Of a stretch of DNA of 64,000 nucleotides, positions 10,637-18,200 are shown piece by piece. Numbering within the stretch: position 1 is the stretch's first letter; each line of letters begins with the position of its first letter. The notes beneath the pieces were generated by a model. The model saw only the letters and a program-made list of their open reading frames with translations, was not told the origin of the DNA and did no database searches. The position numbers and the translations under genes were made by a program. Origin of the DNA: Perna viridis (Eukaryota); assembly GCA_037379345.1 (NCBI GenBank), contig CM074520.1:16719488-16783487 (forward strand), read 5' to 3'.

Positions 10637-11411
10637 GTAAGATTATAATTAATGAAGCAACATTTAAGGGACAACCCTTTGATTTGAGAGGTTGAGAGAA
10701 AAAGGGGTGTTAATTTTTTTTCTTTTTTGCAGAAGAATAAGTACATGTACAACAATTTCTCCACTCTTAGGGGAAATGATATTGATTTTATAAAAGATCA
10801 GTAACATGACCATTTAAAAAAAAAATGTTTCCCACTACCCAACTTACCCATATGAAATTTGCCCAACCAAAAATATATTACAAGTATAGACGAAATTTGG
10901 TTTGGAATTACCTGCTCCTGCTGCAGAAATACGAGTATATGGGTAATCAAACTCAAATAAAAAAAATAAAAATGATACTCGTCTCAGTGCTAAAAAGGTC
11001 TTTAGCTCTTAAAAACTTCAAAACTGATGTGACCACTAGGTGTCAAGGTCCTTATAACATTTGTAGATGCTAACAGTGCTGATAAAAATTGTATTGGAGG
11101 CAAAATCACTGACATACCATTCAATCTATGTAAGAGACTTTTCATCTATCCCTGATTTGGATGTGCATAATAAATGTGTTTACAGAACGAAAGTGGCAAG
11201 TCATCTATTGCCTTAAATAGTTATACCGGTATGATTCGTTTGGTTATTTTAAAGGCAACCCTTTCATAATCTTATGATACATTTTATAGAATCAATATTC
11301 ATATTGAAAAAAAAAAGATTTTGCCCACTTCCTTGAAATAATTTTCTCTAGCAAACAAACATAATTTCAAATGTGACCCAAAATACATAGATTTAAAATA
11401 CCTCTCCCTTG

Positions 11412-11918
11412 AAAGAGTAATCAAGGGAACTAAGGTTATAGCGGTAATCAAAAGAATGTAATCCAGGGACAAAGACCCGACATGGAAAAACAGACATACA
11501 CAACAAAGAACATAAAGTAACTAAAATCATACATGCAAAGTAACAAAAGTAAATGAGTAACTTGGGCTCCACTAAAAACTGGGAGCATGGACCAGGTGCA
11601 CCGGTAGGGTAAGCGTCCTCTGTTTTTCTAGAAACACCCGCCGAGTTGCTCATAAAAAGTCAAGTCCGGGGTAGACAAACGAGGAAAGGAAAACTATGCC
11701 CCGTTGAATAAATCAGTTTTCATGGTGCTGATGGATACACCATAACGATCCACGAGTTCATGATGACGACCATAGAACTTCTGTAGTGATGACTTCAATC
11801 TTGTAGCAACATAACCCTGTTCCAGAAGCCTATTTGTTAGAGTTCTAGTGCGATACAAAAACTCTGCGTAGTTTCAGCAAGCTCTGGTATAACGTATGAA
11901 TTGTGATATGAACACTCC
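11412..11918 (-). mobile_element. PLE copy C (3' ~500 bp)
   Basis: Near-identical to 322-828; same 3' terminus. Confidence 0.88.
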
Positions 11919-12243
11919 ACAAGTCCACATTATGTAAATGTTTTCCTCTCTATTTTAGATTTAGATCTTTTAGACTTTTACATTTTAAGATGACATCTTA
12001 GGGTTGGGGTATCATATATAGGGAGCTTTGCTCACTGACTTCTAGTTTTGAAAATATTTTAAGCCCCTTGCAAAGTCAGTAAAACTTGTTGATTATATAC
12101 AGACTAAACAAAAACAACTACGTTATTAATAACTTTCTCTGTAAATACGCCACCATATTTCTAATGTATAACCAAGTTTTCATGTTACAGAAATAACGGC
12201 CCTTGAATTTTAAGAATTTCATAGAAATAAGAGTTTTCTGAAC

Positions 12244-12296
12244 TTTTTAGCCACCTGTCCGAAAGCCATGTGAGTTATTGCCATCACTTGGTGTCC
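12244..12296 (+). mobile_element. Helentron/HINE-like 5' terminal fragment, truncated by the tRNA-headed array
   Basis: tttttagccacctgtccgaaagccatgtgagttattgccatcacttggtgtcc resembles the T-run + subterminal inverted repeat + GTCC start of bivalve pearl/HINE elements (recall-based). Confidence 0.45.
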
Positions 12297-13357
12297 AGCG
12301 CCCTAGACCACTACCCCATACATTGTGTACTAAGTTACAGCCCTAGATTAATCCTACGAGGAGAAATGACCCGGCCAGCGAAAGCTGGCCGAGTGGTCTA
12401 GGGCGCTGGACTTAGTGCAGGCGGTGTTGCCATAGATGTCACAGCAGTACGAGTTCGAGTCCCGCGGAGGGAACGACCAAAAATTTGCATCACAAATTTG
12501 ACAGTTCTAACATCGTTGGGAATTTTTCAGACCTTTCTATACGTTTATATATCTTCCCTGTATCAATTTGATCCGATGGAGCAGTGTAGCAAATAGAGTC
12601 GTCACATTCTGAGACTTTGTATAATATTGATTTGTTGTGACATGCATCATTAATTTGATCATCTATCCTACATAATAACATCTAAATGAACTATCCCGTA
12701 CCACCATACATCGTGTACTAAGTTACAGCCCTAGATTAATCCTACGAGGAGGAATGACCCGGCCAGCGAAAGGTATATTTTTATATAGCCTAGCTGGCCG
12801 AGTGGTCTAGGGTGCTGGACTTTGTGCAGGCGGTGTTGCCATAGATGTCACAGCAGTACGAGTTCGAGTCCCGCGGAGGGAATGACCGAAAATTTGCATC
12901 GCAAATTTGACAGTTCTAACATGGTTCGGAATTTTTCAGACCTTTCTATACGTTTATATATCTTCCCTGTATCAATTTGATCCGATGGAGCAGTGTAGCA
13001 AATAGAGTCGTCACATTCTGAGACTTTGTATACTATTGATTTGTTGTGACATGCATCATTAATTTGATCCTCTATCCTACATATTAACATCTAAATGAAC
13101 TGTCCCGTACCACCATACATCGTGTACTAAGTTACAGCCCTAGATTAATCCTACGAGGAGGAATGACCCGGCCAGCGAAAGCTCTATTTTTATAGAGCCT
13201 AGCTGGCCGAGTGGTCTAGGGCGCTGGACTTAGTGCAGGCGGTGTTGCCATAGATGTCACAGCAGTACGAGTTCGAGTCCCGCGGAGGGAACGACCAAAC
13301 ATTTGCATCGCAAATTTGACAGTTCTAACATGGTTCGGAATTTTTCAGACCTTTCTA
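12293..13357 (+). repeat. Tandem array (~2.5 units, periods 388 and 409 bp) of a tRNA-headed, structured SINE/retrozyme-like unit
   Basis: Anchor gtgtactaagttacagccctagattaatcc at 12325, 12713, 13122. A boxes TGGCCGAGTGG at 12386, 12795, 13204; B boxes GTTCGAGTCC at 12453, 12862, 13271. Head resembles tRNA-Leu (tggccgagtggtctagggcgctggacttag). Inverted 20-bp head copy at 12293-12312. Confidence 0.9.
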
Positions 13358-13381
13358 TATATATATATATATATATATATA
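13356..13381. repeat. (TA)n microsatellite at the array/PLE junction
   Basis: Direct reading. Confidence 0.95.
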
Positions 13382-13390
13382 CAAGCTTGC

Positions 13391-13987
13391 AGTCAGCCTC
13401 TTATCTTGACCTACACTACACTTAGAAATCGATGGTAAGGAAAACTATTGACTACACTTTACGACAAACGTGATGACTTTTCATTCAGAATTGTCAACTT
13501 TCCTTTCATCTGTGGCAACATCCCTTCAGCACCTGAGTATGGAGTGTTCATATCACAACTCATACGTTATGCCAGAGCTTGCCGAAACTACGCAGAGTTT
13601 TTGTATGGCGCTAGAACTCTAACAAATAGGCTTCTGGAACAGGGTAATGTTGCTACAAGATTGACGTCATCACTACAGAAGTTCTATGGTCGCCATCATG
13701 AATTCGTGGATCGTTATGGTGTATCCATCTACACCATGAAAACTGATTTATTCAACGGGTCATAGTTTTCCTTTCCTCGTTTGTCTACCCCGGACTTGAC
13801 TTTTTATGAGCAATTCGGCGGGTGTTTCTAGAAAAGCAGAGGACGCTTACCTTACTTTTTCTTTGTATGTATGATTTGAGTTACTGTATGTTCTTTGTTG
13901 TGTATGTCTGTTTTCCATGTCGGGTCTTTGTACCTGAAATACATTCGTTTGATTACTGCTATAACCTTGGTTCCCTTGACTACTCTT
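13391..13987 (+). mobile_element. PLE copy D (RT thumb plus 3' UTR with internal deletion)
   Basis: ORF 13448-13765 LYDKRDDFSFRIVNFPFICGNIPSAPEYGVFISQLIRYARAC...TDLFNGS*; ends cccttgactactctt. Confidence 0.88.
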
Positions 13988-15004
13988 CCAATGACTACGG
14001 CAATGTACTATCTTGTTCGTTTTAATGAAATACAACATATATATAGGTGGATATAAAGGAAACATTGTAATATAATTCTGCAAAACATTGTGCTTGATAT
14101 TTTAGAGAATTCATCTGGTTACGAAATTCCAGAATAACTTTCATTAGTTACGTTTCAAACCATGAGAATATTTCTGATCAACCGAAGATACCGTTATTGT
14201 GGATAGACTTCGAAACTTGATATTTTTGCTCACAGAAGAAGCTAGTTCTTGAGGACTAGGAAATTAGAAACAAATGTGAAATCAATATTTAGTTCATTTG
14301 TTACAATTGCCTATTTGTTAGAAACGTCGAGGAAATGTTTGAGTTGTTTGAAAACAAATTGTTGCCCTTGGTGTAAAAATCAATTTCAATTTTGTTTTCG
14401 TTTGAAGTATACAACAGCTTGATCATTGAACAGGATGGGTTTATCAATCCTTTAGTTTGAACATTTATTGTAAAAACTCGGGGGAAAAAACACTTTCTCC
14501 ATCTGTGCTTGATTATTTAGATATTTTATAGATGAAAAAAAAAAACGACCGGAGTGTCAATAAACGCTACTTAGTCAATGCATATCAATACAAATCTACA
14601 TATATTAACAACATTTTAAGGTTGCAATTGGATCTAAAATGAAAAAGTACCATGTACTAATTGATATAGCATTAAGCAAGGTTGATTCATCTTAGTAAAT
14701 TACCCGATGAAGCCATTGTTCAAGATAAAATCGACGGGTGTAGAAAAGCAGTGGACGCTTATCTTTATGACGCAACTGGTTCATGCTCCCAGTTGTTAAT
14801 GAATTTTTGGTTGGTTAGTATTTGTTTTTTTGTGTATTATTTGGTAATTAATTTTATGTTCTTTGAAATGTGTATCTATTTCCTCTGTCTAGTCAATACC
14901 CCTGGATTTTTACCATTTAAATCCTATTTCCTCTGATTTCTATTTAAAAATAATGATAGATATCGACGGTTTAATCAACTATTCTGAATATGTTTAAACC
15001 GGTT

Positions 15005-16199: not shown

Positions 16200-18200
16200 A
16201 TGAAATTAATGATTCATGAATTATACAAAACAGAACGAAACGGAATGAAGAACTCGTATATATGTGCTTCTAAAATGAACACAAAAACAAACCTTGTTCT
16301 TTTCATTGTCTTCAGCAGTAGTTATATATTTATATACTACACTTTGTTTATATATTCACCAAATATAAATTTGTCGAATAAAATAAAGAACCCAAGACAT
16401 AGTCTATTACTAGACACTGTTGGGTGTAAAATTCCAAAATTGGATCCATTCGACGTAAATATCAAAAAGTATTTTCTCTCGAAAGGCAAGAGACTAGAGT
16501 GTGCATACAAACACGATATACTTTATACTGATGGCAACAAAATAAAAATAAATCGGAATTCTCTAGCCCGTCGACTCAAGTTGAAAAACTGTCGATATAA
16601 AGTGATATGGAGACCAACCAATATTGCAACTGATCATAATTACTTCATTCTCGGCAACCAAAGTGAACCATTTAAAGACAACCAAGTGATTAATGACGAC
16701 TTCATTAAAGTAACATGCTTCAACGATAAAAACATTTCAGTTTACAGAAATGCGTTTTCTTTTATACATAAAAAAGCTGCTGTTGAGAGACGCTGCATGG
16801 AAGTCTTCAAGCAATTTAAAAATTCCTCTGACTTTATCAACGTATTAATGATCGGTATTGATTCTGTCTCGCGAAGTAACATGATTCGGTACATGTCAAA
16901 GTCGAGGGAATATCTTCGGAAAGAAATGGATGCACTTGAATACGTTGGGTACAATAAAGTTGCTGATAATACGTTTTTGAATATTGTTCCAATGACGGCT
17001 GGGAAGTTCGTTCATGAACTCCCATGGAATGCAACAATGACAGAAGAAACATTTGATAAATTTGAATTCATTTGGAAAAAGTTTTCAGAAAATGGATATC
17101 GAACATTATATAGCGAGGATGCACCAAATGGACAAGTATTCGACTACGAGAAGGCCGGATTCAGCAAACCTATAGCAGATTATTTCGACCGACATTACTC
17201 GGTTGTATTAGAACACATGAAAGACGTATGGAATACCGATCATCAATGTGTGCATGCTAGACCTGAAACAAAGATAAAGTTAGATTACACAAAACAATTC
17301 GTTAAGACATTCGCAAATTCGCCATTTTTTTCGTTTACGTTCAATACAAGATTAACACATGATATACTGGAGAATGCATATGCAGCTGATGAACTGTACC
17401 TTAATTTTTTCAAAGATATACACGAAGGGTCTTATTTGAAAAACACATTTTTGATATTTTTCAGTGACCATGGGATAAGGTTTGGTAACTTTCGTCAAAC
17501 ACATATAGGGAAAATGGAAGAGAGATTACCATTTTTGTTCATTGTTGTTCCTCAATGGTTTAAATATAAATATACAAATTTTTATAATAGCTTGAAAAAA
17601 AATACAGAGCGGCTTGTGACACCATTCGATATATACGAAACTTTGGTTCATCTTCTGAACATTACAAAATACAAAGATGATTCATTTGGACGGAGCCAGA
17701 GTTTATTCAGTTCTATTCCAACCGAAAGAACCTGTGCACAAGCCGGAATTCTTCCTCATTGGTGCACATGCCTTAATGAAGAAACCGTTTTGGATTTGAA
17801 AAACAAGTTTGTTAAACAAATCGCAAAATCATTTGTCGAAAGCATTAATAAACAACTCCACAATTACACTCAATGTAATCGACTAGAATTAAAAACAGTT
17901 AGAGCAGCTACCAAGTTTTTGCCCTCTGATTATATTTTGAAATACATTAAGACATCACACATGAGACACAAATCCGAAATCAAATTTGGAAAAAGAGTCC
18001 AGGCAAATGTACACTACCAGATTGTGATACAAACTACCCCAGGGGATGGTATATTTGAAGTGACAATGGAATACTCGGAAGCAAGCAGATCTATTAAAAG
18101 GGTTGGAGACATCAGTCGTATAAATATGTACGGCAAAACTTCTCATTGTGTTGAGGGCATTGATTTAAAGAAAATATGTTATTGCAAAGGACAAATCTGA
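16200..18200 (+). CDS. DUF229-family (alkaline phosphatase/sulfatase superfamily) type II membrane protein, single coding exon; true start may be a downstream Met such as MNTKTNL
   Basis: Intact 666-aa ORF; N-terminal hydrophobic anchor LVLFIVFSSSYIFIYYTLFIY; motifs NVLMIGIDSVSR, YNKVADNTFLN, LTHD, FFSDHGIRFG, EERLPFLF, RLVTPFDIYETL, RTCAQAGILPHWCTC, and C-terminal SRINMYG...CYC. Confidence 0.92.
   Translation: MKLMIHELYKTERNGMKNSYICASKMNTKTNLVLFIVFSSSYIFIYYTLFIYSPNINLSNKIKNPRHSLLLDTVGCKIPKLDPFDVNIKKYFLSKGKRLECAYKHDILYTDGNKIKINRNSLARRLKLKNCRYKVIWRPTNIATDHNYFILGNQSEPFKDNQVINDDFIKVTCFNDKNISVYRNAFSFIHKKAAVERRCMEVFKQFKNSSDFINVLMIGIDSVSRSNMIRYMSKSREYLRKEMDALEYVGYNKVADNTFLNIVPMTAGKFVHELPWNATMTEETFDKFEFIWKKFSENGYRTLYSEDAPNGQVFDYEKAGFSKPIADYFDRHYSVVLEHMKDVWNTDHQCVHARPETKIKLDYTKQFVKTFANSPFFSFTFNTRLTHDILENAYAADELYLNFFKDIHEGSYLKNTFLIFFSDHGIRFGNFRQTHIGKMEERLPFLFIVVPQWFKYKYTNFYNSLKKNTERLVTPFDIYETLVHLLNITKYKDDSFGRSQSLFSSIPTERTCAQAGILPHWCTCLNEETVLDLKNKFVKQIAKSFVESINKQLHNYTQCNRLELKTVRAATKFLPSDYILKYIKTSHMRHKSEIKFGKRVQANVHYQIVIQTTPGDGIFEVTMEYSEASRSIKRVGDISRINMYGKTSHCVEGIDLKKICYCKGQI

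What the first reader, a model, noticed from the sequence alone, without database searches (positions are those of the whole stretch)
12312..13357. Spacerless tandem array of a ~409-nt tRNA-headed structured unit: candidate circular / retrozyme-like Pol III RNA
Seen: 2.5 head-to-tail units with no spacer, no poly(A) tail and no evident TSD. The array begins and ends mid-unit (circularly permuted). Every unit keeps intact A (TGGCCGAGTGG) and B (GTTCGAGTCC) boxes and a tRNA-Leu-like D/anticodon region, but lacks a viable acceptor or T stem. The body has several hairpins (aaatttgc-atc-gcaaattt; gtcaca...tgtgac; atca-ttaatt-tgat). Established: ordinary SINEs insert as monomers with tails and TSDs, whereas animal non-LTR retrozymes are tandem units of a few hundred nt made by reverse transcription of circular RNAs and usually carry a hammerhead. 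Inference: this is a rolling-circle cDNA of a small structured Pol III RNA, possibly a distinct class, since no CUGANGA hammerhead core occurs on either strand. Caveat: an internal T5 (ggaatttttcag) could end Pol III transcription early.
Basis: partly seen in the sequence, partly recalled or inferred. Interest (0 to 1): 0.85.

Follow-up and report, generated by a model that had tools for sequence, protein, structure and literature searches.

The report
tRNA-headed Penelope-style tandem repeat
The 2.5-unit array is one insertion of an abundant non-coding mobile element with a tRNA-like head that lands at TA repeats as partial tandems with flipped pieces, as Penelope-like retrotransposons do; it has no ribozyme, and an RNA circle could not be tested.

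Summary
Window 12313-13357 is a spacerless 409-nt array of 2.5 units with intact A and B boxes. It has no tRNA fold, no poly(A), no TSD and no hammerhead core.

The array is not a local oddity. The unit is a high-copy family (3,038 first-look candidates). In 56 insertion complexes from this genome:
- 5' ends are scattered.
- 3' ends sit at two TATA sites (unit positions about 258 and 329).
- 76% of 3' ends abut (TA)n.
- 43% of complexes carry an inverted 5'-truncated copy next to the direct one.
- Flanks show no TSD signal.

These are the published hallmarks of Penelope-like element (PLE) insertions. The genome holds GIY-YIG PLEs that also end at (TA)n and lie next to copies of this family more often than in control DNA. 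I read the family as a PLE-dependent, tRNA-headed, ribozyme-free non-autonomous retroelement, a cousin of animal retrozymes.

Adjacent units share private variants, so each array was copied from one template.

The scan has met this family before on other DNA of this genome (s1-753427, s1-758003), with the same verdict.

The parts
12293..12312 (-). 20-nt inverted fragment of the tRNA-like head (unit positions 98-117) abutting the 5' end of the array
   Evidence: It is 100% complementary to 12392-12411 and 13210-13229 (I4-I6). Inverted pieces begin at the same unit position (94-107) in several other loci (junction sequences). DNA left of 12296 belongs to another repeat family.
12313..12703 (+). 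Unit 1. It starts about 3 nt before consensus position 1 and lacks the 21-nt inner hairpin, leaving CGGCCAGC-GAAA-GCTGGCCG
   Evidence: Alignment. It is 91.7% identical to unit 2 when the gap is counted.
12704..13112 (+). Unit 2, complete 409 nt. It was used as the reference for unit positions 1-409
13113..13357 (+). Unit 3, ending at the TATA site near unit position 250-258
   Evidence: The 247-258 site is the commonest 3' end in the family, 29 of 74.
13356..13381 (.). (TA)13 microsatellite at the 3' junction
   Evidence: TRF. 56 of 74 outward-facing 3' ends in the family abut (TA)>=4.
12386..12462 (+). tRNA-like head of unit 1, from A box to B box. The same module lies at 12795-12871 and 13204-13280
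   Evidence: Motif coordinates. Only a degenerate cloverleaf is found. No Rfam tRNA match.
13117..13257 (+). Junction hairpin: the antisense-head segment pairs with the head of the next unit. The equivalent hairpin lies at about 12708-12848, and in shortened form at 12320-12440
   Evidence: Fold of -68.8 kcal/mol, z = -7.0. No covariation across 73 copies.
12932..12936 (+). Internal T5 (also at 12523 and 13341), upstream of both preferred 3' junction sites
   Evidence: 3' end positions.
11409..11919 (-). 5'-truncated Naiad-type PLE copy. It is the left arm of a head-to-head pair and is context, not part of the unit
   Evidence: The arms are 95% complementary (I1/I2). Full-length relatives carry an N-terminal GIY-YIG domain, a CxC motif and a C-terminal RT.
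13386..13991 (+). 5'-truncated Naiad-type PLE copy, the right arm. Its 5' break point lies 4 nt after the (TA)13

Best explanation
The array is one insertion of a non-autonomous retroelement that is copied in trans by a GIY-YIG Penelope-like element (PLE) reverse transcriptase.

Proposed steps:
1. The endonuclease nicks a (TA)n microsatellite.
2. The exposed TA end pairs with one of two UAUA sites in the element's RNA (unit positions about 250-258 or 323-329) and primes cDNA synthesis.
3. Synthesis runs for more than one unit and stops at a variable point.
4. It often finishes with a strand switch that leaves an inverted 5' piece.

In the window this gave 20 nt of inverted head, 2.5 direct units and (TA)13.

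Shown: the insertion anatomy, its polarity, the TA association, the lack of TSDs, the single-template origin of each array, and the presence and adjacency of EN+ PLEs.

Inferred: which PLE is the partner, that the tRNA-like A/B boxes drive transcription, and how a template longer than one unit arises. The template could be a read-through transcript of an older array, repeated copying of one RNA whose ends are held together by the head/antisense-head stem, or a closed circle.
For: Abundance and sampling:
- The family is abundant, with 3,038 first-look candidates.
- 56 insertion complexes were analysed.

Insertion anatomy:
- 3' ends cluster at positions 247-258 (29) and 319-333 (23).
- 56 of 74 outward 3' ends abut (TA)>=4, against 7 of 38 outward 5' ends.
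- 5' ends are scattered.
- 24 of 56 complexes hold both strands, and 19 have 3' ends on both outer sides.
- The inverted piece belongs to the same subfamily as its direct neighbour.
- Flank pairs share no more sequence than mismatched flanks: mean longest shared word 4.93 against 4.80.

Single-template origin:
- Adjacent units differ at 3.1% of sites and share non-consensus alleles at 1.18% of sites. Random pairs give 5.15% and 0.20%.

Match to published PLE features:
- Craig et al. 2021 (PMC8557442) give 5' truncation, partial tandems, an adjacent inverted 5'-truncated copy and microsatellite targets as PLE hallmarks, with (TA)n named for Naiads. They report that Naiads lack hammerheads. They also describe non-autonomous Chlamys elements with multicopy head-to-tail insertions.

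PLEs in this genome:
- C-terminal GIY-YIG PLEs (family 1, with a CX4CxxC linker) end at (TA)n.
- Copies of the element lie within 1.5 kb in 5 of 12 GIY-YIG loci.
- PLE endonuclease sequence lies in 6 of 56 element loci and in none of 121 kb of control DNA.
- In three loci (L002, L004, L085) a family-2 PLE 3' end is followed through a short TA run by the element in the same orientation.

Conservation:
- A 64-68% identical family with the same head, antisense-head segment and CAGAC..TATA(TA)n end occurs in foreign contigs JYMV01.
Against: - No sequence similarity was found between the unit and the 3' UTRs of the three PLE families sampled. The only shared feature is a short GAC-N(1-6)-TATA end motif seen by eye. 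The partner is therefore not identified.
- Non-autonomous PLE derivatives described so far usually share termini with their partner.
- The adjacency statistics rest on small samples: 5 of 12 GIY-YIG loci against 1 of 14 control loci.
- (TA)n on only 18% of 5' sides leaves room for a (TA)n tail rather than a (TA)n target.
- No RNA data of any kind were obtained.
- Two T5 runs per unit argue against long Pol III transcripts.
Confidence: 0.7

Rival explanations
1. A ribozyme-free retrozyme in the strict sense. Unit-length RNA is cut out by host enzymes acting on the tRNA-like head and junction stem, closed into a circle by a tRNA ligase, and copied by rolling-circle reverse transcription. It concerns the form of the template and is compatible with PLE machinery.
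For: - Arrays reach 4.8 units, with any phase at the 5' end and either of two internal sites at the 3' end.
- Units of an array come from one template.
- The unit junction is constant across copies rather than ragged.
- The unit's two ends pair in a very stable stem.
- Mussel hammerhead retrozymes of 350-390 nt do form abundant circles that RtcB ligase can close (PMC7229834).
Against: - No self-cleaving motif was found: no CUGANGA in 50 units and no Rfam ribozyme at E <= 10.
- No covariation supports the stems.
- Outside the junction stem the unit folds no better than shuffled sequence (z = -1.6).
- About half of the head-sampled copies are shorter than one unit.
- PLEs make partial tandems without any proven circle.
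- No RNA evidence was obtainable.
Confidence: 0.15
2. An ordinary LINE-dependent tRNA-derived SINE with a (TA)n tail. Its tandem and palindromic arrangements arose later by unequal recombination, as proposed for tandem SINEs in the blood clam.
For: - The element has a tRNA-like head with A and B boxes.
- Some copies start at the head (positions 78-84) and end in (TA)n.
- (TA)n is far commoner at 3' ends than at 5' ends.
- Tandem-like and palindromic SINE structures are reported in bivalves and ascribed to recombination (PMC11481361).
Against: - There is no TSD signal, whereas 90% of curated bivalve SINEs have 6-18 bp TSDs.
- There are two alternative internal 3' ends, both at TATA sites.
- The 164 nt between positions 329 and 83 are always present inside arrays and are conserved in a foreign relative.
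- Inverted pieces abut the 5' end at recurrent positions and share the subfamily of the direct copy.
- Array phases differ from locus to locus.
Confidence: 0.08
3. A DNA-level process: satellite-like expansion, extrachromosomal circular DNA re-integrating at fragile TA repeats, or tandem repeats carried by a Helitron or Helentron.
For: - Short arrays are dispersed over all chromosomes.
- TA repeats are break-prone.
- Bivalve Helentrons are known, from my own recall and not checked here, to carry satellite-like arrays.
Against: - There is strong polarity relative to the A-to-B box direction: a fixed 3' end and a ragged 5' end. A symmetric DNA end-joining process would not give this.
- Flanks hold no conserved terminal sequences apart from an unrelated, ubiquitous Naiad repeat.
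- Arrays are short, at most about 5 units.
Confidence: 0.05

Closest known systems
Animal non-LTR retrozymes, for example the 350-390 nt Mytilus galloprovincialis repeats (Cervera and de la Pena 2020, PMC7229834). A 2026 preprint (10.64898/2026.07.22.740005) proposes that they are non-autonomous PLE derivatives.
   Same: Non-coding tandem units of a few hundred nt, thousands of copies, low GC (43% here), no LTR, PBS or PPT, and co-existence with autonomous PLEs in the same genome.
   Different: The defining type I hammerhead is absent. A tRNA-like head with A and B boxes is present instead. No similarity to a PLE terminus was found. Circular RNA was not examined.
Non-autonomous Chlamys elements such as MRC1, and PLE insertion architecture in general (Craig et al. 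2021, PMC8557442)
   Same: 5' truncation, partial or multicopy head-to-tail insertions, an adjacent inverted 5' copy, microsatellite association, and no hammerhead (as in Naiad and Chlamys).
   Different: Those elements share 3' ends with an autonomous family. Here only a short GAC..TATA end motif is shared. Those elements carry no small-RNA-gene head.
[quoted passage not shown] 1998, as cited in PMC2770079 and PMC8490949)
   Same: A tRNA-derived sequence (tRNAscan calls Sm-alpha copies tRNA-Gln), a unit of about 335 nt, and high copy number. That they are both dispersed and tandem is my recall, not checked here.
   Different: They carry an active hammerhead. This family does not.
Tandem-like and palindromic tRNA-derived SINE structures in bivalves, notably Scapharca broughtonii (PMC11481361)
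   Same: tRNA-related SINEs found as direct arrays and palindromes in a bivalve genome.
   Different: Those were described with TSDs and LINE-derived tails and were ascribed to unequal recombination. Here there are no TSDs, the 3' junctions are at (TA)n, and the truncation is polar.

Membership tests
Animal non-LTR retrozyme | Short tandem units (about 170-400 nt), non-coding, multicopy | tested here: met
   409-nt unit in 2.5 copies. The family has 3,038 first-look candidates. Arrays span 0.3-4.8 units.
Animal non-LTR retrozyme | Type I hammerhead ribozyme in each unit | tested here: not met
   No CUGANGA on either strand of the consensus or of 50 units. No Rfam match at E <= 10. The Rfam negative alone is weak, because Rfam also missed a by-eye hammerhead core in PLE locus L079.
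Animal non-LTR retrozyme | Unit-length circular RNA in vivo | not testable with these tools
Animal non-LTR retrozyme | Sequence relationship to a PLE terminus (pLTR) | tested here: not met
   Smith-Waterman scores against the 3' UTRs of PLE family 1 lie within the shuffle range. blastn finds no match to the 3' UTRs of family 1 or family 2 beyond inserted copies of the unit itself, and none to the Naiad arm. Only three families and only their 3' regions were sampled.
PLE-type insertion (PLE-dependent non-autonomous element) | Variable 5' truncation with defined 3' ends | tested here: met
   5' ends fall at 30 different positions. 3' ends concentrate at 247-258 and 319-333.
PLE-type insertion (PLE-dependent non-autonomous element) | Partial tandem (pseudo-LTR-like) arrangement | tested here: met
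   Adjacent units share private variants.
PLE-type insertion (PLE-dependent non-autonomous element) | Inverted 5'-truncated copy adjacent to the 5' end | tested here: met
   24 of 56 complexes hold both strands. In the window the piece is 20 nt, at 12293-12312.
PLE-type insertion (PLE-dependent non-autonomous element) | Microsatellite target, here (TA)n, with TSDs not discernible | tested here: met
   76% of 3' ends and 18% of 5' ends abut (TA)>=4. Control DNA holds 0.035 (TA)>=6 runs per kb. No TSD signal.
PLE-type insertion (PLE-dependent non-autonomous element) | Autonomous EN+ PLE in the same genome that could supply RT and EN | tested here: met
   Naiad-type PLE. Two C-terminal GIY-YIG families, one of which ends at (TA)n.
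PLE-type insertion (PLE-dependent non-autonomous element) | 3' end shared with the autonomous partner | tested here: inconclusive
   No alignable similarity. A GAC-N(1-6)-TATA motif is seen by eye at both 3' sites of the unit, at the PLE family 1 and family 2 ends, and in the foreign relative.
LINE-dependent tRNA-derived SINE | [quoted passage not shown] | tested here: met
   The motifs are intact in all three units and in the consensus. Promoter activity was not tested.
LINE-dependent tRNA-derived SINE | Target-site duplications of about 6-18 bp | tested here: not met
   the observed distribution equals the mismatched-flank control.
LINE-dependent tRNA-derived SINE | 3' tail derived from a partner LINE | not tested
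Satellite or Helentron-borne tandem repeat | Conserved carrier termini flanking the arrays | tested here: not met
   All-against-all comparison of masked flanks finds mainly the ubiquitous Naiad repeat, at variable distance and orientation, and nothing shared by most loci.

The most novel reading that the evidence does not exclude
A hammerhead-free retrozyme. A Pol III-type, tRNA-headed RNA whose two ends pair in a long stem is processed and closed by host tRNA enzymes into a 409-nt circle, which Penelope-like reverse transcriptases then copy by rolling circle into (TA)n sites. That would be a protein-dependent route to the same life cycle that other retrozymes reach with a ribozyme.
Probability: 0.12. 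Interest if true: 0.8.

Novelty: new variant of a known kind. Interest (0 to 1): 0.5.

Why it matters
PLE-dependent passengers known so far are hammerhead retrozymes or deletion derivatives that share PLE ends. A high-copy passenger with a tRNA-gene head, no ribozyme and no shared terminus would show three things:
- PLE machinery can be hijacked much as LINEs are hijacked by SINEs.
- The hammerhead is dispensable for tandem, retrozyme-like amplification.
- "Tandem and palindromic SINEs" reported in bivalves may be PLE products rather than recombination products.

The family also gives a compact substrate, with two defined priming sites and a TA target, for testing how PLEs make tandem and inverted insertions.

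Tried and rejected
- **Known ribozymes.** Rfam at E <= 10 over 11800-13900 and over the head alone found nothing relevant. The hammerhead core search was negative. A control showed that Rfam also misses the minimal hammerhead-like core visible in a PLE 3' UTR, so I rely on the motif search.
- **Genuine tRNA gene.** Rejected.
- **Structured RNA under selection.** No covariation in 73 copies of the junction stem. Outside that stem the fold is no better than shuffles.
- **Ragged unit junction from end-to-end template jumps.** Rejected. The junction is no more variable than other parts of the unit.
- **Units of an array drawn from different RNAs.** Mostly rejected. A few arrays do mix subfamily markers (L018, L036, and unit 1 against unit 2 in the window).
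- **The flanking Naiad repeat as a specific partner or carrier.** Its nearness is explained by sheer abundance, with about 10 copies in the window and 46,058 first-look candidates. Its 3' ends are not at (TA)n.
- **Shared 3' sequence with PLE families.** None found.
- **Supplement and literature look-ups for the unit sequence or the species' repeats.** Nothing found. Ferbeyre 1998 is not held.

Full report
**What is in the window**

Tandem Repeats Finder reports one array at 12383-13370 with period 409, 2.4 copies and 96% matches. Alignment of the units gives this layout:
- Unit 1 at 12313-12703. A 21-nt deletion leaves CGGCCAGC-GAAA-GCTGGCCG.
- Unit 2 at 12704-13112, which I use as positions 1-409.
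- Unit 3 at 13113-13357.
- (TA)13 at 13356-13381, directly after unit 3.

Each unit also has a body T5, and units 2 and 3 carry a second T5 in a hairpin loop. ARAGORN finds no tRNA. Only a poor long-variable-arm cloverleaf appears at 70% thresholds. Rfam gives no tRNA and no ribozyme match at E <= 10. CUGANGA is absent from both strands of the consensus and of 50 genomic units.

A perfect 20-nt inverted copy of the head (12293-12312) abuts the array start. The 60-odd nt that precede each head are antisense to that head, so the unit junction folds into a stem of -68.8 kcal/mol with z = -7.0.

**It is a family with a fixed habit**

The assembly has 723 Mb in 46 contigs. The unit gives 3,038 first-look candidates on all chromosomes, at 87-97% identity. 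I fetched 30 loci selected on the whole unit and 29 selected on the head alone. From these I reduced the data to 56 insertion complexes. Results:
- Sizes run from 0.3 to 4.8 units. In the head-selected set about half are shorter than one unit.
- Ends that are element 3' ends cluster at positions 247-258 (29 cases) and 319-333 (23 cases). Both sites are TATA motifs.
- 56 of 74 such 3' ends run straight into (TA)>=4.
- 5' ends fall at 30 different positions, and only 7 of 38 touch a TA run.
- 24 complexes contain both strands. In 19 of them both outer ends are 3' ends, that is, an inverted 5'-truncated copy sits head-to-head with the direct copy or array.
- The inverted piece carries the same subfamily markers as its neighbour. 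It often starts near position 98, at the 3' foot of the junction stem, as in the window.
- The two flanks of a complex share no more sequence than flanks paired between loci: mean longest word 4.93 against 4.80, and words of 8 or more in 5.4% against 4.6%. There is therefore no TSD signal.
- Flanks carry no conserved carrier termini.

**Each array comes from one template**

Adjacent units differ at 3.1% of sites and share non-consensus alleles at 1.18% of sites (0.50% are private to the locus). Random pairs from different loci give 5.15% and 0.20% (0.01% private). Units of an array were therefore identical, or nearly so, when the array formed, on a template already about 1% away from the consensus. 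They have decayed since.

Two subfamilies exist, defined at positions 152/297/381 as A-A-T and G-G-A. Most arrays are pure and a few are mixed. The junction region is no more variable than the rest of the unit. The junction is thus part of the replicating sequence and is not made anew at each event.

There is no covariation in the stem across 73 copies. Outside the stem the unit folds no better than shuffles (z = -1.6).

**What this matches**

Craig et al. 2021 (PMC8557442) list the following features of Penelope-like element insertions:
- heavy 5' truncation;
- partial tandems (pseudo-LTRs);
- an inverted 5'-truncated copy at the 5' end;
- insertion bias for microsatellites, (TA)n for Naiads, which hides TSDs;
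- no hammerhead in Naiads;
- dominance of Naiads in bivalve genomes;
- non-autonomous Chlamys elements that make multicopy head-to-tail insertions.

Every architectural item on that list was tested here and met. The polarity runs with the A-to-B box direction: a fixed downstream end and a ragged upstream end. This argues for an RNA-templated, target-primed process rather than DNA end-joining.

**PLEs in this genome**

The 95% complementary arms around the array (11409-11919 and 13386-13991) are 5'-truncated copies of a hugely abundant element with 46,058 first-look candidates. Its long ORFs contain a CxC motif and an RT. Its 1,000-aa relatives carry an N-terminal GIY-YIG domain. This is the Naiad architecture. 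Its 3' ends are not at TA repeats, and its nearness to arrays elsewhere is what its density predicts.

A GIY-YIG search found two families with a C-terminal endonuclease:
- Family 1 has a CX4CxxC linker. Its 3' UTR holds a by-eye hammerhead-like core (CUGAAGA ... GAAA). It ends in (TA)n.
- Family 2 ends in ...TTTAGAC followed by TA-rich sequence.

Evidence of association with the 409-nt family:
- Copies of the family lie within 1.5 kb in 5 of 12 GIY-YIG loci, against 1 of 14 control loci.
- PLE endonuclease sequence occurs in 6 of 56 element loci and in none of 121 kb of control DNA.
- In L002, L004 and L085 the element follows a family-2 3' end in the same orientation across a few TA repeats.

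Against a simple partnership, no alignable similarity links the unit to any sampled PLE 3' UTR. The only common trait is GAC, then 1-6 nt, then TATA at the junction. I saw this by eye in both 3' sites of the unit, in both PLE families and in the foreign relative. I rate it as a lead only.

**A relative elsewhere**

A 23-nt head pattern hit public metagenome contigs. Five contigs of set JYMV01 carry a 64-68% identical element over up to 267 nt. It has the same head, the same antisense-head segment and linker upstream, and the same ...CAGAC.TATA(TA)n end. One copy is flanked by (TA)n on both sides, and one pair lies tail-to-tail across a TA run. The composite unit is therefore an inherited design and not an accident of this genome. 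I did not identify the source organism.

**Mechanism and what stays open**

I commit to target-primed reverse transcription by a GIY-YIG PLE at (TA)n, primed by TA pairing at either UAUA site, running over more than one unit and ending in a truncation or a strand switch (confidence 0.7).

The template form is unresolved. It could be read-through RNA from an older array, repeated copying of one RNA whose ends are held together by the head/antisense-head stem, or a closed circle.

The T5 at positions 229-233 lies upstream of nearly all 3' junctions. The copied RNA was therefore not a transcript terminated at that T5.

**Comparison with known systems**

The element works like an animal non-LTR retrozyme or a non-autonomous PLE passenger (PMC7229834; preprint 10.64898/2026.07.22.740005). 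It fails the retrozyme's defining hammerhead test.

It resembles schistosome Sm-alpha in having a tRNA-derived sequence (PMC2770079), again without the hammerhead.

It fails the TSD criterion used for bivalve SINEs (PMC11481361). That paper's "tandem-like and palindromic SINE structures" may deserve a second look in this light.

**Earlier notes of this scan**

After reaching my reading I found that the same family had been flagged several times elsewhere in this genome and followed up twice with the same verdict (s1-753427, s1-758003). Notes on this very stretch had already suggested a Penelope-type boundary (s1-778008). Other notes report true hammerhead retrozymes of about 380 nt in the same genome (s1-768203), and that the genome appears to be Perna viridis (s1-763039). 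I checked neither of these last two.

Noticed in passing
window 11409-11919 (-) and 13386-13991 (+): Two 5'-truncated Naiad-type PLE copies lie head-to-head and are 95% alike, closer to each other than to about 8 other copies in the window (75-89%). The array, its (TA)13 and 373 nt of other DNA sit between their 5' ends, and the (TA)13 lies 4 nt from the right arm's break point. This could be later insertions into a PLE inverted pair, or one composite event.
   Followed up: partly
window 12200-12296: The DNA just left of the inverted head fragment belongs to another dispersed repeat with 812 first-look candidates. Most matches cover about 55 nt. Its family is not identified.
   Followed up: partly
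L079:1895-1935 (also L081, L084): The 3' UTR of a C-terminal GIY-YIG PLE holds a by-eye hammerhead core (CUGAAGA, a 5-bp stem, GAAA). Rfam does not report it even at E <= 10, so Rfam negatives for minimal PLE hammerheads are unreliable.
   Followed up: partly
L079, L080, L082, L084, L085; unit positions 238-258 and 313-329; L088, L092, L093, L098: Every TA-associated 3' end examined (two PLE families, both 3' sites of the 409-nt unit, and the foreign relative) has GAC 1-6 nt before the TATA junction. This may be a priming or recognition signature. It was seen by eye only.
   Followed up: no
L088, L091, L092, L093, L098 (contigs JYMV01...): A 64-68% identical relative of the whole unit occurs in public metagenome contigs of an unidentified organism, with (TA)n junctions.
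   Followed up: partly
window 13183-13197 versus 12774-12788: The inner junction hairpin of unit 3 reads GCTCTA/TAGAGC where the family consensus has GCTATA/TATAGC. This is a compensatory double change inside a single decaying copy. Unit 1 has lost the inner hairpin exactly.
   Followed up: no
window 16200-18200 (+): An intact 666-aa ORF with a DUF229 domain (E = 1e-118) and a weak sulfatase match lies about 3 kb downstream of the array.
   Followed up: no
L004 1039-1148, L008 1064-1220, L040 1761-1963, L053 1135-1416, L084 466-727: Older copies of the same family at 74-82% identity sit next to younger ones. This points to several waves of activity and repeated use of the same sites.
   Followed up: no
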